From the NCBI RefSeq assembly GCF_006345805.1, contig NC_043007.1, positions 36,890,001 through 36,954,000 of the forward strand: DNA of 64,000 nucleotides. Direction: 5' to 3'. Under the pieces are notes generated by a model. That model made no database searches and was not told the DNA's origin. It worked only from the letters and a program-made list of their open reading frames with translations. Positions within the stretch are counted from its first letter, which is position 1; the number at the start of each line of letters is the position of its first letter. The position numbers and the translations under genes are program-made. This DNA is from Octopus sinensis (taxonomy: Eukaryota). Below are positions 8,679 through 62,431 of this stretch, in pieces.

Positions 8679-10835
8679 TGTAGGCGCAGTTACTTCTCTT
8701 GACAGCGGGTTTAAACAAGCTCGCACTAGACGGTCATGTTCAGTAACGACCTCTCGTTCCTAAACATGACCGTCGTGCTGTTTTTGAAGCACTGCATTCA
8801 CTGTCACACCTCGGCATTGCGGCCGCAGTGAAGCTTATCTCGGCCCGCTTTTTCTGGCCGAATATGCGTCGGTCTACTACTGCTTGGTCACGTGCCTGTC
8901 TACCATGTCAGCGTTCCAAGGTGCATCGTCACGTGAGAGCACCACTTGGGCACTTCTAGCCACCAGACACCAGGTTCCGTCACATACACATCGACCTGGT
9001 TGGTCCTTGGCCGGTTAGTTGCAGATTTACTTATATATTGACCTGCATCGACCTTTTCTCCAGATGGCCTGAAGCCATCTCTCTCGTGGACATTTCCACG
9101 GAAACAGTCGCGAGAACACTCATCTCCGGGTGGATATATCCATTTCTTTACTACCCACAAAGGGCTAAACATAGAGGGGATAAACAAGGACAGACAAACG
9201 GATTAAGTCGATTATATCGACCCCAGTGCGTAACTGGTACTTAATTTATCGACCCCGAAAGGATGAAAGGCAAAGTCGACCTCGGCGGAATTTGAACTCA
9301 GAACGTAACGGCAGACGAAATACGGCTACGCATTTCGCCCGGCGTGCTAACGTTTCTGCCAGCTCGCCGCCGGGTGGATATATCGCTTCGGAGTACCCTC
9401 TAGAATTACCACTGATCGTGGACGCCAATTTGAAGCTTGTCTGTTTCGTGAGCTTTCGAGAGAATGTTCGGAGTTCAGCACATCCACACCACAAGTTACA
9501 ATCCCGCCGCAAACGGAATGGTGAAACGATTCCACCGCCAGCTTAAAGCCGCTATTCGCGCGGCTCCTGATCCACATCACTGGTCGGAGTTTCTCCCCAT
9601 TGTTTTGCTGGGGTGCCGCTCAGCTGTCAAGGATGATTTAGGCTACTCCTCCGCTGAGCTCTTGTATGGCACCACCTTAGCACTTCCTGGACAAATGCTG
9701 GCGCCCGTTGACTTACCGAATGCGTACCCCACATCTTATGTTACTCGACTCAGGTCATTCTTTGCTGATCTACCACCGATGCTTCCTCGCGACCAGTCTA
9801 TTTCTTCTACAGTACTTCCAGATATTTTTACTTGGATTCACGTGTTTGTAAGAAATGATGCCGTCAAGGGACCACTCACGTCTCCCTACAGTGGACCCTA
9901 TCGCGTTCTTAGAAGCACACCGAAACTGTTCCCTGTGGATATTCACGGGGAAAAAGAGACTGTCTCTATCGACAGAGTAAAAAAAGGTCTTTTCCGAAAC
10001 ATTTATGCCACTTGCTGACACACCCATCATTCCACAGACACTGCCACCCACCCCCACGAGCACCACCTCCACTTACTGAAACACCACCTGCACAAGCGCA
10101 TTCTTCACCTTACAGGACACGTTCTGGCAGATCGGTTCACTGGCCGAAGAAATTGTCTCAGACTATTTACATTTCTTAATTTTGCCTCGCCAGTGACTGT
10201 TCCGGAGAATAGACTTATGTTGTTATAGACACCGTATTCATATTTTCTCTCTTTCTGTATCATTGTACATATATACTTTGTTCTATTTGATTGGACACAT
10301 TTCTTTACTGAACGCTTTTTTCCTTGTACATACTTGCATTGTATTTTTCAATTGTTCTGCCATAGTTCGGGTTCTGTGTATCGCACATATTGTTCTCTAC
10401 AAGAACAAACATTTTTTCTGCATGCTTCCTCCAAATTTGTACTTTGCATTGTTCATACAACTGTTTTGCCATGTTTCATTCTTCTGTGCCCTTCTACCGC
10501 ACACGTACTCGGCCTACCTTCCTCTTGATCGAACGCTTCAGGTCCAGGGGGTTCTGTAGGCGCAGTTACCTCCCTTGACAGCGGGTTTAAACAAGCTCGC
10601 ACTAGATGGCGCTTCAGCGGTGAGATTCTGACACGAGGCCTTGCGAATTCTTTTTTTGGCATCTAGACATCGGAGAGAAAAGACATGATCTAGTTAGCTC
10701 TCTTACGACACACCGCGAATAGCAGACATGAGGTAATGCGCAGAAGATCATGGCCTCCACGCATCAAACTCCTTCCATGTATCATTCAACTTATATATAT
10801 GTGTGAGGCTGACATTAAAGATATTTAAAGTTACA
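8679..10835 (+). mobile_element. Internally deleted Ty3/Gypsy LTR retrotransposon (52-bp 5' LTR stub, integrase, 3' LTR)
   Basis: 8679-8730 matches 10555-10606. The putative 3' LTR 10555-10835 runs TGTA...TACA with ATTAAA and is preceded by a purine run. Integrase: HHCC (LHSLSH...WPNMRR...CLPCQRSK), [16 protein letters not shown] and [11 protein letters not shown]. It carries stops and frameshifts, and has no gag or RT. Confidence 0.88.
9141..9369 (-). mobile_element. SINE family B1 inserted in the Gypsy integrase, 15-bp TSD
   Basis: TSD CCGGGTGGATATATC at 9126-9140 and 9370-9384. The integrase reads GWIY on both sides. Confidence 0.92.
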
Positions 10836-14951: not shown

Positions 14952-15319
14952 CACATGTATGTATGTATGTATGTATGTATGTATGTATGTATATTTGATT
15001 GACTGTCTGCAGAAAGAGTGCACGACACCATGGTAAAGATTATAGATTCGGTTTTAGTTAAGTCAATATTTTGTTGCTCTGAGTTTTTCCTGTCGGTGCA
15101 GAGGGTGTTCAGACAAGTCATACATATACATACCTCCCCACGCACACACATATACAGGGTTGGCCAAAAGTTACCCGACAGTAAACCAAAATTCCATAAA
15201 TGGCATTGTGTATATGTATGTGTATATTAATATATATGTATATGTATATATATGTGTATATATATATATATTATATATATATATATATATATAATATATA
15301 TATATATATGCGCAGGGCT

Positions 15320-15525
15320 GTATTTGCCCCCACATCGCTTGTCAGCCTATGCTGGTGTGTTTTGGTCCTCGTAAGTTAGCGGTTCGGCAAAATAGTCCGA
15401 TAGAATAAGTACTAGGCTTACAAAGAAAACGTTCTGGGGTTGATTTGTTCGACTAAAACCCTTTAAGGCGGTGTTCCAGCGTGGCCGCAGTCAAATGATT
15501 GAAACAAGTAAAAGAATGAAAGAAG
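15320..15525 (+). mobile_element. SINE family A, 3' half
   Basis: GCGGTTCGGCAAAA...GGCCGCAGTCAAATGA..GAAACAAGTAAAAGA. Confidence 0.75.
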
Positions 15526-18029: not shown

Positions 18030-18545
18030 TCATGTCCTAATACATCTCCTGCTGTGGCTGTGTAGTCCTAACCTGGACAAACACTCCCTCTGGCAGGTGC
18101 CGCAAATGTAGCGAAGACTTTGCCTGGCTGGTTGTAATGTCATAGTTTCTTGTTGACGTCTTTTCTTGTCTTTCCATTTCTCCTCTCTCTCTATGTCACT
18201 CCTATGTCTTCCCTCTTTTACGGTACGTCTCCAACCTCCACGGTTGCTGGCAACTGCTTCCCAGTTGCTAATATTGATGCCGCAGACCTTCATGTCCCTT
18301 TTGCAAACATCTCTGTATCGTAAGAACAGTATTCCCACAGACATAGTGCCCCCAGCAAGCTCTCCGTAGAGTATGTCCTTGGGGATTCTGTCATCTTTGT
18401 ATACGACTAACATGTCCAAGCTATCTGATACGTCTTTGTGTGAGGAGTGCAAACATGCTTGGTATTCCTGCTTGCTTGAGGACATCTTTGTTGGGGACAC
18501 GATTCTGCCATTTGATGCCAAGGATTTTGTATATATACAGTATAT
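18030..18545 (-). mobile_element. RTE-clade LINE ORF2 3' end
   Basis: ILGIKWQNRVPNKDVL...DDRIPKDILYGEL...LRYRDVCKRDMK...YICGTCQRECLSRLGLHSHSRRC (C-terminal C2H2-like motif of RTE). Confidence 0.9.
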
Positions 18546-26077: not shown

Positions 26078-26117
<40 letters not shown>

Positions 26118-26119
<2 letters not shown>

Positions 26120-26253
26120 CGCGGGCGTAGCTGTTTGCTAAGAAGCTTGCTTCCCAACCACATTGTTCCGGGTTCAGTCCCAATGCGCGGCACCTTGGGC
26201 AAGTGTCTTCTACTATAGCCTTGGGTCGACCAAAAGCATGTCAGTGGATTTGT
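26118..26253 (+). mobile_element. SINE family A, 5' part
   Basis: GGCGCGGG..GCTGT head, GGTTCAGTCCC and TGGGCAAGTGTCTTCT. Confidence 0.75.
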
Positions 26254-26425: not shown

Positions 26426-26519
26426 TGTGTGTATTTTTCCCTTGTCAACAATTAACACGGAAAAATAGACAAATAGTTACCAGGGTAGCAAAAAATCAAG
26501 TAAAAAGTTGTAACTCCTT

Positions 26520-26950
26520 TATGTCAAGTAACTCTAAAATTAAAAATTCTATATACCAGTGTAAAATTACTACTCGTAATGAAGTATATTTTTATATAAG
26601 AAGCACATGTTCCCAGTTATCTAAAAGAATTTCTAATCATTACTCTACATTTAGGAATAGGAATAAACGTAACAGCACAGGGCTTAGTAAATTAATTTGG
26701 GAACTAAAAGACCACAATAAACAATTTAATATTTAGGTTGGTTGATTCCCTCAATCTCGATACCTTATGACAAGGGCAAGGAATTCTGTCTTCTCTGTAA
26801 TTCTGAAATATTTTTTTTTCTAAAAATGCCCCTTGTATACACGGTTATAGAGCGTGCGTACCGATGTAAACATTGGCAGAAACACACCTTTAGTTCATAT
26901 AAGTGATTTCTATCATTATATATAATTTAAACATTAATTTTCTTCTTACA
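26520..26950 (+). mobile_element. Penelope-like element GIY-YIG endonuclease remnant
   Basis: IYQCKITT...YFYIRST...KRISNHYSTF...TGLSKLIWELKDHN, then PYDKGKEFCLLCNSE. These motifs match the PLE endonuclease C-terminal region. Confidence 0.75.
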
Positions 26951-27598
26951 TTTCCCATTCACTAGATATATATGATCAACTAACTCTGTATCGCCTCTTG
27001 CCTATTATTATTATTATTATTATTGCTTTTGTTATTGTTGTTGTCATTGTTGAGCTTGTTTTTCTTTTAACGCAAATCATCCTTTATCAAGCTGATTACA
27101 ATCAAAGGCGTTCCAGTCGAGACCATCCAATTTTTAAAATTCCAACAGAGTGTACATCTAGGACTACCTATTCTAACAATATCATTTTTTGAAGCACGTC
27201 AATTGATTTGAAGGAGTATTCGCTGCTATCTCTACAGACCATGTATCAGTTACCCGGTTGGAGTGTAGTGTAAGCGATATGGCGTATCAGCCTCGTTCTG
27301 GTCACTCTTTACATGTTATTACTGCTTTGCTTTCAGCTTATCATTTTGTTAGCCTCGTTTCTCTATTGATTTTGATTTTTTTATCTACAAATATATTAAT
27401 ATATATAGCTTTGTTTGTTTGTTTGTTTCCTTCTTAGTTTGATTTTTGTATATGTGGATTACGTATGAGTGTGTATATATATATATCTATTTCTATGTGT
27501 GTGAGTGTGTGTATATGTGTGTATTTGTCTCACTTTTATTAATTATTTCAAACAGTTTTATTGGTGCACATATTATTATTAATGTCATTTTATTATTA

Positions 27599-29120: not shown

Positions 29121-29200
29121 GGTACTTATCGACGACCACGAAAGGATAACAGGCAAAGTCGACCTCGGCGGAATTTGAAGTTAGAACTCACTAACACATA

Positions 29201-29608
29201 GGCGTAGGAGTGGCTGTGTGGTAGGTAGCTTGCTTATGAACCACATGGTTCCTGGTTCAGTCCCACTGCGTGGCACCTTGGGCAAGTGTTTTCTGCTATA
29301 GCTTCGGGCCGACCAAAGCCTTGTGAGCGTATTTGGTAGACAGAAACTGAAAGAAGCCCGTCGTATATATATATAAATGTGTGTGTGTGTCTGTGTATAT
29401 GTTTGTGTGTCTGTGTTTGTCCCCCAACATCGCTTGATAACCGATGCTGGTGTGTTTACATCCCTGTAACTTAGCGGTTCGGCAAAAGAGACCGATAGAA
29501 TAAGTACTAGGCTTACAAAGAATAAGCCCTGCGGTCGATTTACTCGACTAAAAGCGGTGCTCCAGCATGGCCACAGTCAAATGACTGAAATAAGTAAAAG
29601 AGTAAAAG

Positions 29609-29610
<2 letters not shown>
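29201..29610 (+). mobile_element. SINE family A, full length
   Basis: Head GGCGTAGGAGTGGCTGTGTGG, with an (AGTAAAAG)n tail running into (GA)n. Confidence 0.9.
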
Positions 29611-34591: not shown

Positions 34592-35478
34592 CGAGGTAGT
34601 ATCAAAAGGTTCCTCGATTGGTTATGTTTAATAAAAACTTATTTACCAAAGTTTTAACACTATCTCCTTTGAAATAGTCACCTTGTGCAGCAATACACTG
34701 GTCCCAGCGTTCCTGGCACTTTTGGAATCCGGTCTTGAAGTCGTTTTCTGTAAGTGAGTTGAAGACCTATAATTCACTCTGAATCTCAACAGCGATGTTA
34801 AAACAGCGACCTTTGAGTTGCATTTTCATTTTAGGGAAGAGATGGAAGCCCGCAAGTGTTAAATCTGGCGAATAGGCCGGGTGCAGAAGCGATACTATGT
34901 TTTTGGCGAGAAACTCACGAATGAGGAGAGCTCGATGACAGGATGAATTGTCGTGAAGAATCCAATTCTTCGCACTCCGTCGATTCGGTCGCTTTCTCCG
35001 AATGTTCTCCCTCAAACGCTTCAAAACATCGCAGTAGAACTTTCGATGGACAGTCTGGCTCTGGGGGACAAATTCTCAATGTTCAGTACCGCATTTCCAG
35101 GGTGACCCCCGTGGCAGGTCTTCCAGGGTCGTCTTTCCGCTTTTGAAGCACCAATGCCACTCGAAACATTGCGTACGACCCATTGCTTTGTCGCCGTAAC
35201 CTTATCGAAGCAAGCTCAATATCTCTGTAGCAAACTTCTCAAGTTTAATGCAAAATTTTACGTTGGCTCTTTGTTCCTGTCCATGACAAAATCACAGACT
35301 ACAGCATACACGTGATTACAGAAACACAAATTTCACAACTTGCAAAGTAAACACAGCAATGTCACTAAACACACTGTCTCATGAAGGTCACCGTTAACTC
35401 TCACTACGTTCGCAACCGTATGCTGCCAGCTGTTGGCGCGCTACAGAACTAGTCCGGGAACGATTTGATACTACCCTG
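34592..35478 (-). mobile_element. Internally deleted mariner transposon with both TIRs
   Basis: TA-CGAGGTAGTATCAAAAGGTTCC versus the reverse complement TA-CAGGGTAGTATCAAATCGTTCC. Residual ORF: ILHDNSSCH...HPAYSPDL...LFPKMKMQLKG. Confidence 0.88.
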
Positions 35479-36219: not shown

Positions 36220-36427
36220 CTCTTTACTCTTTTACTCTTTTACTTGTTTCAGTCATTTGACTGCGGCCATGCTGGAGCACCGCCTTTAGTCGAGCAAATC
36301 GACCCCGGGACTTTTTCTTTGTAAGCCCAGTACTTATTCTATCGGTCTCTTTTGCCGAACCGCTTAGTGACGGGGACATAAACACACCACCATCGGTTGT
36401 CAAGCAATGCTAAGGGGACAAACACAG

Positions 36428-36480
<53 letters not shown>

Positions 36481-36645
36481 TACGATAGGCTTCTTTCAGT
36501 TTCCGCCTACCAAATCCACTCACAAGGCATTGCTCGGCCCGAGGCTATAGCAGAAGACACTTGCCCAAGGTGCCACGCAGTGGGACTGAACCCGGAACCA
36601 TGTGGTTGGTAAGCAAGCTACTTACCACACAGCCACTCCTGCGCC
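36220..36645 (-). mobile_element. SINE family A, full length
   Basis: Head GGCGCAGGAGTGGCTGTGTGG and (AGTAAAAG)n tail. Confidence 0.92.
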
Positions 36646-36685
36646 TATTCATTACAATATTTTTCAACAACGCAGAAATTTTATA

Positions 36686-37061
36686 CATGCCGGATCAGAA
36701 GGTTGGTCTCGTTTCATATAGCCTTGTTCTGCGAGATGCACCATCTCTTTGGCAGCTTCGTGCATGCTGCATGCTCTTTCGTAACGAACAGCAGCTTTTT
36801 GAGTCTCAATATGAGCCTCTTTTTCCCTCATCCTTGCATCATAATATGGTCGAGCTTTATCAATGCATGCACCCAGCTTTTTAGACATTGCATTAAGTTG
36901 CTGTGTCGACTCAGAGAGTTCTTGTCGGAATGCTGCCCGAGCATCGTCTAATTCAAGTTCCAAGGCGTTTATTTCTTCAGAGGCTTTGTTTAGTTGCTCA
37001 AGTTCAATCTGAATGCGGGGATCTAAAACCTCGTCCTCCCCGTTAGATAACCATACATCAA
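36686..37061 (-). pseudogene. SH3BP5L: Intronless, doubly truncated SH3BP5-like coding fragment (probable retrocopy; a true exon is not excluded)
   Basis: EDEVLDPRIQIELEQLNKASEEINALELELDDARAAFRQELSESTQQLNAMSKKLGACIDKARPYYDAR...ETQKAAVRYERACSMHEAAKEMVHLAEQG...DPA closely matches SH3BP5L/parcas. It has no stops and ends just before the expected WQEMLNHA. Confidence 0.8.
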
Positions 37062-37840
37062 TACAATCAACACATTTTTGCCGACAAGTTACAAGTTTGT
37101 TTATTCTGGTAATATAAAAATCTGGAGTTTTGGAGCTGATGAACTCTTTGAACGCACTTTCAGCATCGGTTTGATTTTTGAACCCCTCTCGCTGGAAACC
37201 ATCAAGGTGCTTGAAAAAGTGGTAGTCAGCAGGAGAAAGGTCTGGGGAATAAGCTGGGTAGGGAAGAACTTTCTAGCCAAGTTTCCTCAACTTCTGGAAA
37301 CGTGTGAAACGTGTGGTCGGGCATTGTCATGAAGAATGATTGGCTCTCTTTTGTTGACCACTCTGGGACGGAGGAGTGGCAGTTTTTCGTTGATTTTGGA
37401 AATTTCGTGGCAATATGTTTCTGCAGTAATGGTTTTACAGGGTTTTTAAGAATTTATATTGGACGACTCCGGCAGTACACCACCAAACAGTCACCATTAC
37501 CTTCTTTTTGAAGACTTCGGGTTTAGGAACGATTTTGGTGCTTCATTTTGGTCCAACCACTGCGAAGGAGGTTTTTTATTATTGTGCAGAATCCGCCTTT
37601 CATCGCAAGTTACAATACGGTCGAGAAATGGATCGGTCTGGTTACGGAGAAGAAGCGACGAGCAAATTTCATATCTGCGCATTTTCTGATTTTCATTCAA
37701 GTTGTGTGGTACCCATTTCTCGATTTTTATTTTCCGATCGCATGCAAATGGTTGCAGGCAGTTTTCTAGCTAACTTGAAGTTCTTTTGCCAGTTCTCGAG
37801 TGATTTTACGTGGATCTTTCTCAATTACTCTCTTATGATC
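37062..37840 (-). mobile_element. Hsmar1-like (cecropia-type) mariner transposase remnant
   Basis: DPRKITRELAKEL...KWVPHNL...RRYEICSSLLLRN..DPFLDRIVTCDE...YSPDLSPADYHFFKHLD...RINKLV..RQKCVDC. Stops and frameshifts occur upstream of 37273. No TIRs were seen. Confidence 0.9.
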
Positions 37841-38346
37841 AAAAACAAGCCCATACCATTACTAATCCGCCTCCGAATTTGACTGTAGGGATTGTATTCT
37901 TTGGTCTATTATTAGCTGGTCTTGCCAGTTTTCTTACTGTACGCTCCACTAATTACGTGGGCGACCGGAGCGGACTAGAGGGAGAATAGAATTTGTTAAC
38001 AATTACGTATTATAGTACCAACTGAACTCAGGGGGTACATTAAGCTGTGCAGAGATCTTTCTGTACCAATTGCCACTCTTATGAAGGTCAACAATATGCA
38101 CACGGAGGTCGTGACTAATTTGTTTATTTTTACCCATGAAGATGATATTCTCTCTACGGTAATATTGTCAGAACTGATGCAATGGCTATACATGCTCACA
38201 AACGAAACTTCTTGAATTTTTTTTAGAACACTGTAGATATTCTGAAAAAAACCCCAAACAAACAAATTATTTTTATTCAAAATATCTGGAAAATTATTCA
38301 ATTGAGTCAAATGTGTTGTAAACTTTTGCGTTTTGAAGTTCAACTT
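37841..38346 (-). mobile_element. Sleeping-Beauty-like Tc1 element, 5' end with an internal deletion
   Basis: ATG at 38137 reads MGKNKQISHDLRVHIVDLHKSG...LSSVGTIIR, then RSGRPR and PKNTIPTVKFGGGLVMVWACF. A TIR-like GTGTTGTAAACTT...TTCAACT lies at about 38312-38345. Confidence 0.82.
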
Positions 38347-38569
38347 TTTTTCCACATAATATTTTTTCTGTTCATTATTATGTATTTGATGCATTGAATA
38401 TATTACAAACAACTTCATAAATGGTGGAAATTTCATTAACATGCGTTAACTCAATATATGTAAACATGGATTTTTTACTGCGTATATATGATATATAATA
38501 AATACTCAAATACATAGATACATACATATAGTATATATACATATTAATGTTTGTTTTTGTATGCATGCA

Positions 38570-38651
<82 letters not shown>

Positions 38652-38839: not shown

Positions 38840-39400
38840 ATAGACAGAACGCTATTAATATTGTTTAAAAAAAACGTTATATGATATACGTCATAAGTAG
38901 CTAACAGAAAGAGTAGGGATATTATAGTGAATGTTAAATATAAAGGAAATTAAAGTCTAAACTATATATAATGATAGAGACTACTTATATGCACTAAAGT
39001 ATGTTTTGCCAATGCTTACATCTGTATGCTCGTTCTATAACCGTGTTTACTAGTATTTTTAGAAAAAATAATGAAAAATAGCTCAGAATTGCAGAGAAGA
39101 CAGAATTTCTTGCCTTTGTCATATGGTATCGAATTGAGAGGATCAACCATTCCAAATGAAATTTTCATTGTGGTCTTTTAAATTCCAAATCAGTTTGCTG
39201 AGACCGGTACTATTCCGTTTATTTCTATCCCTAAATGTTGAGTAATGGATAGAAATTCTCTTAGATAACTGCTAACGATGTGCTTCCAATGTAAAATTGT
39301 ACTTTATTACGAGTACTGATTATACACTGGTATATAGAATTTTAATCTTAGAGTTACTTGACATAAATTTAATTCTATTGGGATTGACTTCAGATACAAT
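38840..39400 (-). mobile_element. Penelope-like GIY-YIG remnant, same family as 26520-26950
   Basis: 39085-39370 aligns by eye to the reverse complement of 26520-26800. Confidence 0.75.
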
Positions 39401-40611: not shown

Positions 40612-40739
40612 CTACCAAACCATCAACTAGTTTTTCACATTGTTGCTACTTCACTTCAAGTTCTCTTTTGTTAGCCTTTCTCTCTCTCTTTCTCTTTTAT
40701 CTTTAGTCTACCCCCTCCAACCTTCTCTCCTTCTGAGTT

Positions 40740-41038
40740 GACATCCACCACCACCACCACCACCACCACCACCACAAAAGACAGGCCACTACATCTTTCA
40801 CTCATAAATCACCACCAGAGGCGTCCGAGAGGTGGAAAGGCTTTCATTAATCAATGTTGTGAAAGGAAATATGTCGGTGGCAACGCACATATTGCTGTTG
40901 GTGCTGGTGGCGTCGGGGATGACGGTGGTGTCGGTGATGACGGTGGTGGTGGTGGAGGTGGTGGTGGTGTGGTGATGGTGGCATTGGTGGTGGTGGTGAT
41001 GGTGTTGGTTGTTGGTAATGATGATGGTAATGATGGTG

Positions 41039-41077
<39 letters not shown>

Positions 41078-41225
41078 ATGATGATGATGATGATTATGAT
41101 GATTATGATGATGATGATGATGATGATTATGATGATGATGATGATGATGATGTTATGTTTGTTGGTAGTATTGATTGTTGTTGTTGTTGGTGGTGGTGTC
41201 GGTGTTATCAAGGATAGTGATGGCG
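40740..41225. repeat. (CAC)/(GGT)/(GAT)n compound microsatellite
   Basis: Directly visible. Confidence 0.95.
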
Positions 41226-41739
41226 GTGGTTGTATTGATCGAGAGCCATTGGCAATATAGTTTGTTATTGTGTCGTGGTCAATGTTTGTGTTGCTGTTAA
41301 AGCCCCAGGTCAACCTTAATAAGTATTCCGGTCGTGACCACCACCTCCTTTCAAAGTATGTCGGACTACCTTATCTAATGTGTTCCCCCAAGCTTATATA
41401 AAACCGTTTTGTGCGATTTGACGGTGATTTGGCTGTTATATTTAGCAGGCCATGTGACCACATAGAGGCACTGTCGTCGGCTTTTCTTACAGTAATAGAT
41501 ATTATTGATAAAACTGCTTAGCTCCCGGTTAGCAATGATGGAACTGACTCATTGTCAAGACGTTCCAGTTATGACCATCTCATCTCGCCTTTGCTATTGT
41601 TTATGTCGTAAGCGGTGTTATCGAGTACATTATTCTTGTAAGACGATAAGCAGTTGAGGGAATTCGGTTGCTATTTCTGGCATATCGAGCGACCACGTAT
41701 AGGTTTCTTCATTGATTTGTACTTGTTGTTACTGGCCGC

Positions 41740-41748
41740 AGCAGCAGC

Positions 41749-41790
<42 letters not shown>

Positions 41791-41941
41791 GGTGGGGATG
41801 GTTTTGGTGGTAGTGGTGTTGGTGGTAGTAGTAGTAGCAGTAGTGATCGTGGTGGTGGTGGTATTGGTGGTAGTGGGTGTGGTGGTAGTGGTGGTGGTGG
41901 TAGTAGTAGTAGTAGTGTTGGTGGTTTTGGTAGTAGTGGTG

Positions 41942-41973
<32 letters not shown>

Positions 41974-42001
41974 GGTATTGGTGGTAGTGGTGGTGGTGGT
42001 G

Positions 42002-42046
<45 letters not shown>

Positions 42047-42111
42047 TAGTAGTAGTAGTGTGGTGGTGCTGATGGTGATGGCGGTTACGATTTTGCAGAG
42101 CAGAAACAAAG

Positions 42112-42161
<50 letters not shown>

Positions 42162-42196
42162 CACTGCTGCTACTACTACTGCTGCTGCTGCTGCTG
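41740..42196. repeat. (GTA/GTG)n then (CTA/CTG)n microsatellite
   Basis: Directly visible. Confidence 0.95.
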
Positions 42197-42240
42197 AGTT
42201 GAGAAGTTCAATACAACTTAGTGTTGTGTTATATTTATAT

Positions 42241-42421
42241 TATTATCGCAGCGTTGCCAATAGCGACGGTCCAAACATGACCGAATTTTCTGCGTTTGAG
42301 CATGCGCACAAAAGGTTCCAATCGGTCTCCATATCGCCACGGCTTCCACCCCACCCCCACCCACGTCGTGTTTAAACCTCTTTTAGGAGTTTCTGTTTAG
42401 GTTTGGCCGTTGCTAGGTTAT
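42241..42421. promoter_or_regulatory. Candidate promoter (RFX X-box, NRF1-like, CCAAT and CACCC motifs)
   Basis: GTTGCC-AAT-AGCGAC 42253-42267, GAGCATGCGCAC 42298-42309, CCAATC at 42318, CCACCCCACCCCC near 42347 and GTTGCTAGG at 42409, all within a CpG-rich unique island. Confidence 0.5.
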
Positions 42422-42541
42422 TTATTTATTTACATATTTTTTAAATTTATTTATTTGTTTATGTTTTTGATTTTGTTTGTTTGTTTGCTTATTTGTTTAT
42501 TTCTTTCGTGGCAGAATGAGTTGGAGAGTGAAAGAGGGAAA

Positions 42542-42581
<40 letters not shown>

Positions 42582-42789
42582 AGAAAAGAATGAAAGAAAT
42601 ATAATAATAATATTGGTGGTAGGTGTTTTGGTACTAATAGAGTTGGAGGTGTTGGTGTTGGTGGTAGTTTTAGTGGTGGTGGTGGTGGTCGTGGTCGTGG
42701 CGGCGGCGGTGGTGTTGGTGATGGGGGTTGTTATAGTGATGGTTGTGGGGATGTTAGGTGTTAATTGGAAGGGTGGTTGTAGTGGTAGT

Positions 42790-43170
42790 GATTGAATGGT
42801 GGTGCTTGTATAGTGGTGGTGGTGGCAGTGGTGATGGTGGTGGTAATGGTGGTGGTGGTGGTGGTGGTGGTGGTGGTGATAGAATGGTAGTGCTTGTATA
42901 GTGGTGGTGGCAGTGGTGATGGTGGCAGTGGTGATGGTGGTGGGGTGGTGGTGGTGGTGGTGGTGGTGGTGGTGGTGATAGAATGGTAGTGCTTGTATAG
43001 TGGTGGTGGCAGTGGTGATGGTGGTGGCAGTGGTGATGGTGGTGGTGGTGGTGATAGAATGGTAGTGCTTGTATAGTGGTGGTGGCAGTGGTGATGGTGG
43101 CAGTGGTGATGGTGGTGGTGGTGGTGTGGTGGTGGTGGTGGGGTGATAGAATGGTAGTGCTTGTATAGTG
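42790..43170. repeat. VNTR: 25-bp core GATAGAATGGTAGTGCTTGTATAGT x5 with (GGT/GAT/GCA)n spacers
   Basis: Cores at 42790 (degenerate), 42878, 42977, 43053 and 43145. Confidence 0.85.
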
Positions 43171-43399
43171 GTGGTGGTGGTGCTGCTGCTGCTGGTTGTG
43201 GTGGTGCTGGTCAGTATTACACTGAAATATATCGGCTGATCGATCGGTGAAGTGGGTAAGTTTCTTTGTAAATCGCCTTCGTCGCATTTAACAATCATCA
43301 TCGTCATCATCATCGCTATCATCTGAGTGGAGGTGTCACTCTTGTCACCACTGTCACCACCACCACCACCACCACCACCATCATTGTCACGATCATCAT

Positions 43400-43614
43400 C
43401 ATATCACTATCAGCATCGTCGTCGTTGTCATCATCATGATCATCATCTCACTATCATCATCGTCTTCATCATCGTTGCCATCATCGTCATCATTGTCGTC
43501 GTCGTCGTCGTCGTCGTCATCATCATCATCATCATCACCATCATCATCACCACCATCATCATCATCATCATCATCATCGTCATCATCATCGTCATCATCG
43601 TCATCATCACCACC

Positions 43615-43668
<54 letters not shown>

Positions 43669-43720
43669 GTCATCATCACAACCACCATCATCATCATCAT
43701 CATCATCACGATCATCATTA
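43400..43720. repeat. (CAT/CGT/CAC)n microsatellite
   Basis: Directly visible. Confidence 0.95.
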
Positions 43721-44067
43721 CAGAATGAGTCAACGCTTTACACATGTGCTCCTCTTTGTGTCTGTTTCTGTCTGTCTGTCTGTATGTCTCTCTCTCTTTC
43801 TCTCCCTCTGAGTGCTTTTCTCTTTCTTTCACACAGATGAACTCCCCCACCACTTTCCTTCCCACCACTTTCCTTCCACCACTTTCCTTCCCACCACTTT
43901 TCCTCCCACCACTTTCCCTTTCGCACACACTCTCCCGCCTTTTCATTCTCTTTCCTCTCTGTCTCTTTTCCATACAGCCACACTATTCCTTTCCCCCCTT
44001 TCTCTGTCTTCTTATCCCCCTCTCTCTCTCTCTCTTCCTTTATCTCTGTCTCAGTCTCTACCTCTAT

Positions 44068-44094
44068 CTCTCACCCTCTGTGTCCCTATATCTG

Positions 44095-44137
<43 letters not shown>

Positions 44138-44444
44138 ATCTCTGTACCTCTTTCTCAGTTCGTACCTCTCTCTCTCACCCTCTCTGTTCCTATATTTGTC
44201 TCCCTCTATCACTCTCTGTCCCTATCTTCCAGTATTTATCAAATACAATTCTCCTCCACCTCTCACCCTCTGTGTCCCTATATCTGTCTGTCTGTCTCTC
44301 TCTCTCTCTTTCTTCTCTCTCTCTCTCTCTCTTTCTATCTCTGTACCTCTTTCTCAGTCCGTACTTCTCTCTCTCACCCTCTCTGTTCCTATATTTGTCT
44401 CCCTTTATCACTCTCTGTCCCTATCTTCCAGTATTTATCAAATA
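44068..44444 (+). repeat. Tandem duplication of a ~180-bp CT-rich unit
   Basis: 44068-44245 and 44260-44444 both end ...CCTATCTTCCAGTATTTATCAAATA. Confidence 0.8.
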
Positions 44445-44808
44445 AAATTTTCCTCCACTTATCTCTCTCCTTTCCTCCCTGTCTTGTACTTTTACTTTCT
44501 CTCAAATCACACGCTCCTCTTCACTCATATTCCCTCGCATACTCTCTTTCATACACATGATTTCTTTCTTTCTCTCTTCCTTTCACACACACACACGCAC
44601 ACACACACACACGCACGCACACACACACACAAACACATGTGCACACACACAGAGTGTCTCTCTCTATCTCCACGACTCTCTCTTTCTCTCTCTCACACAC
44701 ATACACATAGTGTCTCTCTCTCTATTACGACTCTCACACACACTGTTTTTATTTTTTGTCTCTCTGTCACTCTCACACACACATACACACTCCCTTTCAT
44801 ACATATTA

Positions 44809-44842
<34 letters not shown>

Positions 44843-44997
44843 CCACTCTCTCCTACTTTCTGAGGTTCTGTTGTAGTTATTTGTGCGTGTGTGTTATCTA
44901 AAATTATATAATAAGGGCAGATAAATATGATAGTCTACACTTCACATCTTTCCGCTGTAATATATTCACGTCAAACTTCTTGTTCTGTGAACACACG

Positions 44998-51867: not shown

Positions 51868-54765
51868 GTATATGTATATATTCTTTTATTCTTTTACTTG
51901 TTTCAGTCATTTGACTGCAGCCATGCTGTAACACCGCCTTTAGTCGAGCAAATCGACCTCAGGACTTATTCTTTGTGTGTGTGCGTGTGTATGTATACAT
52001 ATATATTTATACTTTATTAAAAAACAGCAAAAAATCACAAAAAAATGTTACTCAGCGTTTCACGTTCCCGTTCGTCGGGCAGTTTTGTTTAGAAACAAAA
52101 CTCTCCGACGAACGGGAACGTGAAACTCCGAGTAACAGTTTTTGTGATATTTTTGCCGCTTTTTAATAAAGCACTTTATTCTACCCCTGGTATTCGAGTA
52201 CTATTAATTTTCCACCTTGTTTTGCATTTATGTGCTTACTCTGGTATGTATATATACACGTATACATATACACGTATGCATAAGGACACCCAAATATAGA
52301 CAATTTTTTGAGTCTAGTTAATTCAAATTATTATTTATAGTTTCAAAATCACTCAATGTTTTAGAATTCGTTATCATTAGGCTCGCCTCTCCACAGCTGC
52401 CTCGCTTAACGTTTGGACTAATTTTGATTATTATAGCACACATGTTCACTGTAGTAATGGTTCCGTTGCAAAAATTCCATACTAAAGATTCCATACAAAT
52501 GTACGTTATGTTGATTGAAGAATCTTTTTGCAATGGTTATTCCTACTAGTTTAAAACATGCATTTTATATATGTCTATTTTTACTGCTATCAGTTATTTG
52601 CCCATAAACATTTTTGCCTTACAGATTTGAACACTTCTACATTCATTCTAATAATAATTTCTACAACACATCTGTCTTACTTTGCAAAACACGAGAATAT
52701 CTACGGATATTATCCCAAACTCATTCATGTAAATTAGCGTTAATTGATAATGCAAATTAAAATATGTTATATTCTATGTAAAGATTTTGTACCATTTCAA
52801 ACCTTTACTTACAATCCACCTGCTGTCTATATACTTATTGAATTATTGTACTAACAAGATCGGAAGATTCCTATTTTCTGTCAGTATGTAAGAAACAAAA
52901 GGGAAAAATTTTTAATAATTTATCATTGTTATTATAACTGAAAATAATTCTCACAATAGCCTACAAAATTAATTAAAAGAGAGGAAGAGAGAACGTGAGA
53001 TGTAAAGAAAGACGAGAGGAGACGAAAGAAGAGAGAGAAAAGAAAGACAGAAAGAAGGAGGGAGGGGCAAAGAAAGACGGCAAGAAAGATGTTCACAGAG
53101 ACGATAATGTAATAGAAAAAATCTTTACGTAGAAACTTTTGTGTTGAGTTAAAATAAAATCAGTGGACAGTGGAAACCCAAACGAAGAGGACTAAGGAAG
53201 TAATTCTTGTATAAGACTACATTAAAACCTTAATTATTCAGCCATGTCTCCATTATCCATTCTCAGTTACTTCATTTTCGAATCTGATTCGGAACATTAG
53301 CCGAATTAATCTAATTTCATAAAAGTCGCTTCCTCCCTGGTCAAAGAGAACTTAAGAAAAGCCATGGGGAATGGGAATGTCTCCAAGGCCTCTAGCGATT
53401 AAATTTTAAATAGGTTGTTGTTGTTGTTTATCTCCAAGTTATCTCTGATCATGCTAACCTATGAACATAGGAATTCCCGTCATGACCATCCCGACTTTTA
53501 GTTCAAGCACGGGCACCCTAGACAACGTTAGTCAATATTTCCATCTTTTAAAGAAAGTAGAGTGATGTTTGGAGATTTGGCTGCTATTTCTACCAGGTTG
53601 AGTGACCACATAGAGACTCCCATGTCCGATCATTCATAAATGTGTAAATAACTAGATGTATTCATGTATAAGACAGTAAGGTGTGATACAAGGAGAGTTT
53701 AGCTGCTTTTTCTAGCAAGACAAACAATCACTCAGAGGACAACTTACTGGTTTGTTAAATCGGTCGTTAGTGTTGTTTAACTCCAGGCCAACCATAATTC
53801 AATAGACATATGATCAAAACAGTTCCAGCCTTGCCGTAAGACTACGTTATGGAGTGTGTTTCTTTTCTAAAGAGAGATTTAACAGCTATTTTAGCATATC
53901 TAGTGACTATATAGAAGTCCACACATGTCATTTATCAAATCAGCATTTGTTAAAATGAGGAGATAACTCATGTCTTCTTCCTGGAGATCGTGAGTAATTA
54001 TTTGGAGGGATCGGGATGTCAAATAATTTTATTCTAACTATTGAGAAAAATAAAATAACAAATTCAATTCTTTAGTCTTGACATAATGATAAAACTGGAG
54101 CCAGGAAAATGATTGAGTTGATAGCTAGAAATAATTAAAGGCCAAAAATATTATCTGGATTTATCGATTTGGAGAATATGTCGCTAGACTATTTTTCTTA
54201 GACAGGTATGGTGGAAGTACTAATGATGATAGTGGCGGTGATGGTGACAGTGGTGGTCGTGATGATGGCGGTGGCGGTGATGGCGGTATCGGTAATGGTC
54301 GTCGTTATGGTTGCGGGAGTGGCAGTGGTGGTAGTGGTGGTGGAAGTGGTGGCGGCGGCGGCAACGGTGTGATGACGGTGGAGCTGATGGTCGTATTTGT
54401 GGCGATGGCGACGGAGGTAGTGGTGGCAATGATGGGTCAATGGGGAAGATGGCGGTGATGGGTCAATGGGGAAGATAATTTAATGGCAGAGAAAGAGCGT
54501 GGAATTGGGAGACAAAATGATATTTTTTTTACTTTCTTAAAACATTGAAAGGAATATTTCTTCATTCGTGACGCTGTCTAATATAATTTAATAATGGTAA
54601 AATTGAGAACTGGAAATTAATTGATCCGAAAGAGCAGGATAAAAATTCCCGTGTGGATACAATAATCAGCAGAGTTCTTTGGCAGTTTGTGAATAGATGA
54701 TATATTGCAAGGGGCTCGGATTTCTAGCACAGATTTAAGGAAGGAAATAAATATATAAATATATA

Positions 54766-55175
54766 GGCGCAGGAGTGGCTGTGTGGTAAGTAGTTTGCTA
54801 ACCAACCACATGGTTCCGGGTTCAGTCCCACTGCGTGGCATCTTGGGCAAGTGTCTTCTGCTATAGCCTCGGGCCGACCAAAGTCTTGTGAGTGGATTTG
54901 GTAGACGGAAACTGAAAGAAGCCTGTCGTATGTATGTATATATATATAAGTGTGTGTGTATATGTTTGTGTGTCTGTGTTTGTCCCCCTAGCATTGCTTG
55001 ACAACCGATGCTGGTGTGTTTACGTCCCCGTCACTTAGCAGTTCGGCAAAAGAGACCGATAGAATAAGTAGTAGGCTTACAAAAGAATAAGTCCCGGGAT
55101 CGAGTTGCTCGATTAAAAGCGGTGCTCCAGCATGGCCGCAGTCAAATGACTGAAACAAGTAAAAGAGTAAAAGAG
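54766..55175 (+). mobile_element. SINE family A, full length, 14-bp TSD
   Basis: TATATAAATATATA at 54752-54765 and 55176-55189. Confidence 0.92.
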
Positions 55176-55252
55176 TATATAAATATATAAAGAAAGAAAC
55201 AATACACAAATCCATGCCTATATATTTGTACCAATATGGAAAGAAAGATTAA

Positions 55253-61880: not shown

Positions 61881-62011
61881 ACGAAGGTGGCGATGCGCAT
61901 TATAAAACCAAAACCACTTATTTCTTGCATTACAGTTAGTGACAAATGAATTTTTCCTTTTGGTTTTATTTTGCGTCTAGCTACCTTTATTATTTTATAA
62001 TGTTCGCATTA

Positions 62012-62431
62012 GGCGCAGGAGTGACTGTGTGGTAAGTAGCTTGCTAACCAACCACATGGTCCCGGGTTCAGTCCCACTGCGTGGCATCTTGGGCAAGTGT
62101 CTTCTGCTATAGCCTCTGGCCGACCAAAGCCTTGTGAGTGGATTTGGTAGACGGAAACTGAAAGAAGCCTGTCGTATATATGTATATATATATGTGTGTG
62201 TGTTTGTGTATGTGTTTGTGTGTCTGTGTTTGTACCCCTAGCATTGCTTGACAACCGATGCTGGTGTGTTTACGTCCCCGCCACTTAATGGTTCGGCAAA
62301 AGAGACCGATAGAATAAGTCCTGGGTTTACAAAGAATAAGTCCTGGGGTCGATTTGCTCGACTAAAGGCGGTGCTCCAGCATGGCCGCAGTCAAATGACT
62401 GAAACATGTAAAAGAGTAAAAGAGTAAAGAG
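62012..62431 (+). mobile_element. SINE family A, full length
   Basis: Head, core and (AGTAAAAG)n tail as in the other copies. Confidence 0.92.

What the first reader, a model, noticed from the sequence alone, without database searches (positions are those of the whole stretch)
36664..37272. Mariner transposase C-terminus fused in frame to intronless SH3BP5L, forming a 202-codon open frame
Seen by manual translation: the minus strand is open from 37272 to the stop at 36664-36666. It reads KVLPYPAYSPDLSPADYHFFKHLD...RINKLVTCRQKCVDC|IDVWLSNGEDEVLDPRIQIELEQL...DPA|CIKFLRC*. The ORF track missed the first 103 codons for lack of a start codon. The SH3BP5L part is undamaged while the upstream mariner is decayed. 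There is no poly-A and both ends are truncated. An SB-like Tc1 5' end, the mariner and SH3BP5L are all co-oriented. Known: SH3BP5/5L are Rab11 GEFs. As recalled, vertebrate genes have introns after LDPRIQ and twice more in this span. Inference: a spliced-mRNA fragment captured by template switching or break repair, possibly an incipient TE-host chimeric gene. Alternative: a symmetric phase 1-1 exon 37022-36687 (TTTTAG...T|GTATAA, 336 bp) that could be spliced.
Basis: partly seen in the sequence, partly recalled or inferred. Interest (0 to 1): 0.8.

Follow-up and report, generated by a model that had tools for sequence, protein, structure and literature searches.

The report
Dead SH3BP5L retrocopy fragment beside mariner relic
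A 360-base intronless piece of the SH3BP5L gene, copied from spliced mRNA and cut short at both ends, lies next to a decayed mariner transposon in an octopus-type genome. The long open frame across the two is most likely a by-product, so this is an ordinary processed pseudogene fragment.

Summary
The minus strand is open for 202 codons (37272 to the stop at 36666-36664). It is the longest open frame in the window that is not low-complexity.

The upstream 70 codons are the tail of a decayed mariner transposase. About 119 codons are SH3BP5L (Pfam SH3BP5, E=2.5e-45).

The intronless claim is now shown by comparison, not recalled:
- An octopus-like genomic contig (L001) carries the same coding sequence at about 97% identity. 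There it is split by a 256-nt intron and preceded by another intron.
- A more distant cephalopod-like contig (L003) has introns after LDPRIQ, ELELD, AKE and ATMKV.
- The window piece therefore joins four parental exons seamlessly. It begins inside exon 1 and ends 31 nt before the end of exon 4. This rules out the single-exon alternative.

Nothing supports a working chimeric gene:
- A TAG lies directly upstream, and there is no ATG in the first 128 codons.
- Only half of the Rab11-GEF domain is present; one of the two Rab11 contact stretches is missing.
- There is no poly-A and no target-site duplication, and no other SH3BP5 exon lies in the 64 kb.

In-frame fusion has a one-in-three chance. 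The excess of synonymous differences against L001 (6 of 8) is probably divergence between species in the parent gene.

Verdict: a young, truncated processed pseudogene fragment among transposon debris. Interest is low.

The parts
38138..38482 (-). 5' terminal region of an SB-like Tc1 element. It has an outer CAGT...GTTTACATA-type repeat and an inner copy (aaaagtttacaacacat). No matching right inverted repeat occurs anywhere in the window.
   Evidence: Sequence read. The blastn-short search for a right repeat found nothing. The resemblance to the Sleeping Beauty IR/DR is from my own knowledge and was not tested.
37844..38137 (-). Tc1/SB-like transposase remnants. The N-terminal HTH (MGKNKQISHDLRVHIVDLHKSG...) is followed by stops and an internally deleted piece (...KNTIPTVKFGGGLVMVWACF*).
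   Evidence: PF25787 HTH_SB, E=2.1e-13; three-frame translation.
37049..37828 (-). Decayed mariner transposase relic. It lacks its 5' end (the HTH_48 region and the ITR) and its 3' end (the last ~6 codons, the stop, the 3'UTR and the ITR). At least 4 frameshifts and at least 3 in-frame stops lie upstream of 37272. The last 70 codons (37272-37063) are open.
   Evidence: PF01359, 61 bits. tblastn of P0037 residues 111-334 aligns in two frames with stops. All close relatives end ...WQKCVDCNGSYFD*. The end coordinate is uncertain (37063-37047).
37055..37061 (-). Possible 7-nt imperfect tandem duplication (TTGATGT after TTGATTGT) inside the mariner tail. Without it the sequence reads GATTGTAATGGTT, identical to mariner relatives (C-N-G). 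With it the frame shifts by +1 into the frame of the SH3BP5L part.
   Evidence: DNA of relatives L005 and L006 compared by eye. The gapped extension did not improve the alignment score, so this is an inference only.
36686..37046 (-). SH3BP5L-derived intronless fragment. It comprises the end of parental exon 1 (to 37009), exon 2 (37008-36946), exon 3 (36945-36817) and 131 of the 162 nt of exon 4 (36816-36686). It has no stop or frameshift.
   Evidence: Pfam SH3BP5, E=2.5e-45. L001 exons 152-280 and 537-698 match the window with the 256-nt intron absent. L003 supplies the intron positions. The start coordinate is uncertain by a few bases.
36664..36685 (-). Read-out of the frame into unrelated DNA (CIKFLRC plus TGA). 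The parent reads WQEMLNHATMK here.
   Evidence: Codon-by-codon comparison with L001.
36646..36685 (-). 40 nt of unassigned sequence between the SH3BP5L break and the SINE. It is not poly-A and is not detectably mariner 3'UTR or ITR.
   Evidence: Local alignment to the 3' ends of L005 and L006 is no better than shuffles: 190 of 500 and 496 of 500 shuffles reach the observed score.
36220..36645 (-). Full-length copy of a ~430-nt SINE-like repeat with an internal (TA)n/(TG)n tract. It is co-oriented with the other parts and is a neighbour, not shown to be part of the same event.
   Evidence: Four other copies in the window at 87-91% identity. The alignment defines both ends. No clear target-site duplication.

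Best explanation
What it is:
- A young, non-functional processed pseudogene fragment. A cDNA copy of spliced SH3BP5L mRNA, about 360 nt, runs from roughly codon 12-15 of exon 1 to 31 nt before the end of exon 4.
- It sits immediately after the broken 3' end of an older, already decayed mariner relic.

Why the frame is open for 202 codons:
- 119 codons are recently derived from a conserved coding sequence.
- The adjoining 70 mariner codons happen to be free of lesions.
- The two happen to be in phase, possibly through a 7-nt duplication.
- The frame then runs 7 codons into flanking DNA to the first stop.

Shown: the mRNA origin, truncation at both ends, the greater decay of the mariner, and the absence of a start codon and of half the GEF domain.

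Inferred: how the ends arose. My split is:
- about 45%: an ordinary LINE-mediated, 5'-truncated retrocopy inserted into the mariner tail, followed by one deletion that removed its 3' part, the poly-A and the end of the mariner;
- about 40%: a cDNA fragment captured during repair of a double-strand break in the mariner relic;
- about 15%: reverse-transcriptase template switching.
For: - Intron loss. L001 (Logan SRR11869391) holds two exons separated by a 256-nt intron with ttccag/gtcagt boundaries. The window matches them back to back (36945-36817 and 36816-36686) with 8 differences in 258 nt.
- L003 shows introns after LDPRIQ, ELELD, AKE and ATMKV.
- Truncation inside exons. Homology stops at 36686, where the parent continues GG CAG GAA ATG... 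for 31 nt.
- No other SH3BP5 similarity in the 64 kb: the next best tblastn E-value is 0.011.
- Age order. About 8 disabling lesions lie in the ~630 nt of mariner upstream of 37272, against none in the 361 nt of SH3BP5L. At the mariner rate about 4.5 would be expected, giving a Poisson P of about 0.01 (my arithmetic).
- No function. There is a TAG at 37275-37273 and the first in-frame ATG is codon 129.
- The Pfam match covers profile positions 2-121 of 231. The fragment aligns to human SH3BP5 residues 38-149. Rab11 binding uses residues 39-67 and 240-262 (PMC6138693).
Against: - The canonical hallmarks of LINE-mediated retroposition are absent: there is no poly-A tail and no target-site duplication.
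- 6 of the 8 differences from L001 are synonymous. If L001 were the parent in the same genome, this would argue for purifying selection on the copy. With about 75% of random changes expected to be nonsynonymous, the binomial P is about 0.004 (my arithmetic).
- The parent gene of the window's own genome was not available.
- Expression was not testable.
Confidence: 0.85

Rival explanations
1. An incipient or functional chimeric gene. In this reading the mariner tail and the SH3BP5L alpha1-alpha2 coiled coil are expressed together, or as an exon spliced into a host transcript, and are kept open by selection.
For: - A 202-codon frame without lesions, longer than in any of 30 shuffles.
- 6 synonymous against 2 nonsynonymous differences from L001.
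- The alpha1 Rab11-contact stretch is retained.
- AG and GT dinucleotides at 37023-37022 and 36686-36685 could in principle act as splice sites.
Against: - A stop lies directly upstream and there is no ATG for 128 codons.
- Half the domain and the second Rab11 contact stretch are missing.
- In-frame junction has a 1-in-3 chance.
- The synonymous excess is expected if L001 is a sister species and the differences lie on the constrained parental branches. None of 10 window ORFs is in the protein collection that holds L001's sample.
- No protein matching the copy's own sequence was among the hits; the closest was 84% identical.
Confidence: 0.05
2. A genuine exon of the resident SH3BP5L gene, or an ancestral cassette exon at 37022-36687, with the mariner lying in the upstream intron.
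For: - A pyrimidine-rich stretch with CTAAC and TTTTAG precedes 37022.
- The GTATAA at the break looks like a donor site.
- In one relative (L004) exons 1-3 are fused, so intron content varies in the family.
Against: - In the near-identical octopus-like parent (L001), two introns interrupt this very span and exon 4 continues 31 nt past the supposed donor.
- Similarity to SH3BP5L starts at least 16-24 nt upstream of the TTTTAG (EDEVLD).
- No further SH3BP5 exon is found in the 36.6 kb downstream or the 27 kb upstream.
Confidence: 0.03
3. An assembly or library artefact, such as a cDNA-derived read or a chimeric join placed among repeats.
For: - The piece is flanked by repeats (mariner and SINE).
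- It is intronless and has abrupt ends.
- No read data are available.
Against: - The copy differs from the only available parent sequence at 8 of 258 positions.
- It is joined to unique, non-repeat sequence on the 3' side, the 40 nt at 36685-36646.
- The mariner has no other copy in the window that could mislead an assembler.
Confidence: 0.05

Closest known systems
Processed pseudogenes / retrocopies of host mRNAs made by LINE reverse transcriptase
   Same: The copy derives from mature spliced mRNA: three intron positions are removed exactly. It is 5'-truncated, sits away from any other exon of the gene and lies in transposon-rich DNA.
   Different: There is no poly-A tail, no 3'UTR and no target-site duplication. 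The 3' end is cut inside the coding sequence, so a later deletion or a non-canonical insertion route is needed.
cDNA or filler fragments captured at double-strand breaks (endonuclease-independent insertion, as described in yeast and mammalian cells; from my own knowledge)
   Same: A short fragment truncated at both ends, without poly-A or duplication, replaces the missing end of a pre-existing element.
   Different: No junction signature (microhomology, untemplated bases) could be established, because neither the mariner consensus nor parental exon 1 was available.
Transposase-host fusion genes such as SETMAR (mariner transposase fused to a SET domain)
   Same: A mariner transposase sequence and a host coding sequence lie in one open frame.
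   Different: SETMAR keeps a whole transposase joined by splicing, has a start codon and is conserved and expressed. Here the transposase is a 70-codon tail of a decayed relic, the host part is half a domain, and there is no start codon.
SH3BP5 / SH3BP5L Rab11 guanine-nucleotide exchange factors (structures 6DJL, 6IXV)
   Same: The fragment aligns to human SH3BP5 residues 38-149 (E=1.3e-24). It includes the conserved LDPRIQ...LN stretch of helix alpha1, which contacts Rab11.
   Different: Helices alpha3-alpha4, the second contact stretch (240-262) and the whole C-terminal region are absent.

Membership tests
Processed pseudogene / retrocopy | Parental introns are absent and exon-exon joins are exact | tested here: met
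   The L001 intron 281-536 (256 nt) and the intron before L001 152 are absent from the window. The joins fall at 36946|36945 and 36817|36816. The third join, 37009|37008, is placed by homology to L003.
Processed pseudogene / retrocopy | 3' poly-A tract | tested here: not met
   The sequence after the break at 36686 is TATAAAATTTCTGCG...; the 3' CDS, the UTR and the poly-A are all missing. I therefore file it as a truncated mRNA-derived fragment, not as a canonical complete retrocopy.
Processed pseudogene / retrocopy | Target-site duplication flanking the insert | tested here: not met
   No repeat of 9 nt or more between the downstream flank and the upstream junction regions, apart from one chance 9-mer. 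The SINE flanks show none either.
Processed pseudogene / retrocopy | Located away from the parental locus | tested here: met
   tblastn of 19 SH3BP5-family proteins finds only 37038-36673 in the 64 kb. This holds only as far as the window reaches.
SH3BP5/SH3BP5L Rab11 GEF (functional member) | Complete four-helix GEF domain with both Rab11 contact stretches | tested here: not met
   The Pfam match covers profile positions 2-121 of 231. The fragment aligns to residues 38-149 of 6DJL chain B. The contacts are residues 39-67 and 240-262 (PMC6138693).
Mariner (Tc1/mariner) transposon | Transposase similarity | tested here: met
   PF01359, 61 bits. 1243 homologues at E<=0.001 for the 82-residue tail. 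P0037 aligns over residues 111-334.
Mariner (Tc1/mariner) transposon | Intact transposase ORF and terminal inverted repeats (an autonomous copy) | tested here: not met
   There are frameshifts and stops. The N-terminal ~110 residues and the last 6 residues are missing. No ITR was found, and the mariner has no second copy in the window.
Domesticated transposase-host fusion gene (SETMAR-like) | Translatable ORF with an initiation codon covering both parts | tested here: not met
   A TAG lies at 37275-37273, and the first ATG in frame is codon 129, inside the SH3BP5L part.
Domesticated transposase-host fusion gene (SETMAR-like) | Expression, conservation across species, and purifying selection on the fusion | not testable with these tools
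   No reads, no genome of the same species and no orthologous loci are available. The pairwise 6 synonymous: 2 nonsynonymous count against L001 cannot be assigned to branches.

The most novel reading that the evidence does not exclude
The fragment is a very young lineage-specific retrocopy that is transcribed, for example exonised through the AG at 37022 and the GT at 36685 or read from a neighbouring promoter. In that case it would yield a short alpha1-alpha2 coiled-coil peptide that retains one Rab11 contact stretch, a possible decoy or dominant-negative born from a transposon-host junction.
Probability: 0.04. Interest if true: 0.5.

Novelty: new member of a known kind. Interest (0 to 1): 0.15.

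Why it matters
It matters little beyond annotation. It documents a recent mRNA-derived insertion in a cephalopod-type genome, which means reverse-transcriptase activity has acted on host mRNAs there. It also warns that long stop-free frames spanning a transposon relic and a gene fragment can arise by juxtaposition alone. It should be masked or labelled as a pseudogene so that it is not predicted as a second SH3BP5L gene or as a SETMAR-like fusion. If transcripts across the junction were found, it would become a modest example of gene birth from transposon and host pieces.

Tried and rejected
- **Junction peptide search.** Searching the big protein collection with the junction peptide, to find parental exons 1-2 or a second copy of the fusion, gave no candidate. 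An earlier attempt failed on the E-value limit.
- **Mariner family consensus.** A search with the mariner tail found nothing above 66% identity. The 50%-cluster library gave only distant relatives. So the consensus, and with it the exact junction, could not be derived.
- **Same-species test.** An exact look-up of 10 window ORFs, to learn whether L001's sample is the same species, found none. This is weak evidence because start-codon choices may differ.
- **Literature.** A search for the run accession SRR11869391 gave no paper. A search for octopus retrocopies found nothing relevant.
- **Tc1 repeat and duplications.** Searches for a Tc1 right inverted repeat, and for target-site duplications around the whole mosaic, found nothing.
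- **The 40 nt at 36685-36646 as the mariner's own 3'UTR/ITR**, which would have proved insertion into the mariner: similarity to L005 and L006 is no better than shuffles. Rejected.
- **The 7-nt duplication at 37061-37055.** It is attractive by eye but not supported by alignment score. I keep it only as an inference.
- **RNA searches of the SINE and neighbourhood.** ARAGORN found no tRNA. Rfam gave only sub-threshold microsatellite matches to miRNA families.
- **Co-orientation** of Tc1, mariner, SH3BP5L and SINE as evidence for one chimeric cDNA: the chance is about 1 in 8, so it is not significant.

Full report
**1. The observation**

A TAG at 37275-37273 closes the frame upstream.

The mechanical ORF list shows only a 99-aa TTG-started part, 36664-36963. 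Among all stop-to-stop frames of the window this is the sixth longest. The five longer ones are microsatellite or low-complexity translations. None of 30 shuffles of the window reached 202 codons; their maxima ranged from 110 to 198. The frame is real and not a chance product of composition.

**2. What the pieces are**

- *SH3BP5L part.* Pfam finds SH3BP5 (PF05276) at residues 82-200, E=2.5e-45, covering profile positions 2-121 of 231.
- *Mariner part.* The upstream residues belong to a mariner transposase. The frame-corrected translation of 37828-37063 hits PF01359 at 61 bits. The 82-residue tail has 1243 homologues at E<=0.001.
- *Mariner decay.* An intact 340-aa relative (P0037) aligns over its residues 111-334 to 37727-37063. 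The alignment needs two frames and contains stops. Three-frame reading shows at least four frameshifts and at least three in-frame stops upstream of 37272.
- *Mariner ends.* All close relatives end ...WQKCVDCNGSYFD*. The window stops matching at CVDC, so the last ~6 codons, the stop, the 3'UTR and the terminal repeat are missing. The N-terminal ~110 residues are missing too.
- *Tc1 part.* Further upstream lies the 5' end of an SB-like Tc1 element (PF25787 HTH_SB, E=2e-13). It has stops and an internal deletion, and no right inverted repeat exists anywhere in the window.
- *SINE.* Forty bases downstream of the SH3BP5L part begins a complete ~430-nt SINE-like repeat (36645-36220). Four other copies lie in the window at 87-91% identity.

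**3. The intronless claim, tested against a parent gene**

The first protein search returned short ORFs called on genomic contigs of animals. One of them (P0006) lies on contig L001/L002 from Logan runs SRR11869391 and SRR11869390.

L001 contains two SH3BP5L exons:
- exon 152-280, preceded by ...cttaaattccag and followed by gtcagt;
- exon 537-698, preceded by tttccag and followed by gtgaag;
- a 256-nt intron between them.

The window matches these exons back to back, at 36945-36817 and 36816-36686, with the intron exactly absent. Only 8 of 258 nucleotides differ.

A more distant contig (L003, ENA ERZ26696912) gives the structure of the whole region. Exon 1 ends after LDPRIQ (cag|gtaaat). Exon 2 encodes VELEKLNKASEEINRLELELD. 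Exon 3 runs from DARASF to AKE, and exon 4 from AHLETQ to ATMKV.

The window segment therefore joins the end of exon 1, exon 2, exon 3 and most of exon 4. It can only derive from spliced mRNA. Its ends lie inside exons:
- At the 3' end, identity stops at 36686, where the parent continues for 31 more exon bases (WQEMLNHATMK).
- At the 5' end, similarity reaches back to about S-N-G-E-D-E-V (37046). This resembles SSNSED in L004 and SGSDDFEDE in L003.

No other SH3BP5 similarity exists anywhere in the 64 kb.

The span is not one exon in the octopus-type parent. They also dispose of the alternative 'symmetric exon'. The TTTTAG is just the codons for V-L-D inside the homologous stretch, and the GTATAA lies at the truncation point, not at a parental exon end.

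**4. The junctions**

DNA of two mariner relatives (L005, L006) reads GATTGTAATGGTTCTTATTTCGATTAA at this point. The window reads GATTGTA-TTGATGT-ATGGTTATCTAACGGGG.

If the seven bases TTGATGT (37061-37055) are an imperfect duplication of the preceding TTGATTGT, the mariner continues through AATGGTT. The junction with SH3BP5L then lies near 37049-37046, and this 7-nt insertion is what brings the two parts into one frame. The gapped extension does not raise the alignment score, so this is an inference. The junction is safely bracketed only as 37062-37044.

The 40 nt after the 3' break resemble neither poly-A nor the 3'UTR/ITR of L005 or L006 above chance; 190 and 496 of 500 shuffles scored as well. 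No target-site duplication was found.

**5. Age and selection**

The mariner carries about eight disabling lesions in ~630 nt. The SH3BP5L part carries none in 361 nt. At the mariner's rate about 4.5 would be expected (Poisson P about 0.01; my arithmetic). The cDNA piece is therefore younger than the mariner relic.

Against L001, six of the eight differences are synonymous and two are not: K to Q at 36900 and A to E at 36825. If L001 were the parent in the same genome, this would indicate constraint on the copy.

L001's species is unknown, however:
- None of ten window ORFs is in the collection that holds L001's sample.
- No protein matching the copy's own sequence turned up; the closest hit was 84% identical.
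- The accession is not mentioned in the searchable literature.

The simpler reading is that L001 is a sister species. The synonymous differences would then lie on the constrained parental branches.

**6. Function**

The fusion frame cannot be translated as such. A stop lies directly upstream, and the first ATG is codon 129, inside the SH3BP5L part.

The fragment corresponds to human SH3BP5 residues 38-149. The GEF domain is a V-shaped bundle of four long helices. It binds Rab11 through residues 39-67 of alpha1 and residues 240-262 of alpha4 (PMC6138693). The second contact stretch and helices alpha3-alpha4 are absent.

In-frame joining has a one-in-three chance. Co-orientation of the four elements has a chance of about one in eight.

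**7. Mechanism**

The mRNA origin and the truncations are shown. The route is inferred. Three routes fit:
- a normal 5'-truncated LINE-mediated retrocopy inserted into the mariner tail, then one deletion that removed its 3' part, the poly-A, the duplication and the end of the mariner;
- a cDNA fragment captured in the repair of a break in the mariner relic;
- template switching by reverse transcriptase.

I weight these at about 45, 40 and 15 percent. The orthologous site in a sister species and a mariner consensus would decide between them.

**8. Comparison and verdict**

This is a truncated processed pseudogene fragment beside transposon relics. That is a well-known kind of object in animal genomes, here in a new instance. 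It is not a member of the functional SH3BP5 family, not an autonomous mariner, and not a SETMAR-like fusion gene by the one feature that could be tested (a start codon). Interest is low. The residual novel reading, an expressed chimeric or exonised peptide, gets about 4%.

Noticed in passing
window 36220-36645, 62010-62431, 54749-55177, 26-427, 29198-29610 (partial copies at 15265-15523, 26115-26252, 51879-51976): A ~430-nt SINE-like repeat family with a conserved head (GGCGCAGGAGTGGCTGTGTGGTAAG...GGTTCCGGGTTCAGTCCC), an internal (TA)n/(TG)n tract and a GTAAAAGAGTAAAAGAGTA tail. Copies are 87-91% identical. ARAGORN does not call the head a tRNA. One copy (54749-55177) has an AT-rich flanking duplication.
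   Followed up: partly
L001 1-43: The intron upstream of parental exon 3 in the octopus-like contig starts with the tail of the same SINE family (79% identity to window 51917-51875). This is what places L001's organism close to the window's.
   Followed up: no
window 34671-35099 (minus strand): A second, different mariner-like transposase relic, co-oriented. It shows 29% identity to P0037 residues 194-339 and includes an 85-aa ORF...HPAYSPDLTLAGFHLFPKMK...
   Followed up: no
L004 453-773 (ENA ERZ23499240 scaffold): In another mollusc-like sequence the SH3BP5L exons 1-3 form one uninterrupted exon from the ATG to AKD, followed by a GTGAGT donor. Introns 1 and 2 of L003 are absent there, so intron content varies within the family.
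   Followed up: partly
window 40675-44900: A 4-kb block of low-complexity, homopolymer-codon-like sequence gives the longest stop-free frames of the window on both strands, up to 354 codons.
   Followed up: no
window 38925-39367 and 26518-26964: Another dispersed repeat, 82% identical and in inverted orientation. It was not identified.
   Followed up: no
window 9464-10018 (+) and 18030-18521 (-): ORFs that by eye look like a retroelement integrase C-terminal part and a LINE-type ORF2 C-terminus with a Cys/His motif. They were not scanned against any library.
   Followed up: no
window 36415-36490 and 38553-38632: (TA)n tracts give sub-threshold Rfam matches to the mir-297 and mir-1277 models (30-38 bits against gathering scores of 81-90). 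These are composition artefacts.
   Followed up: yes
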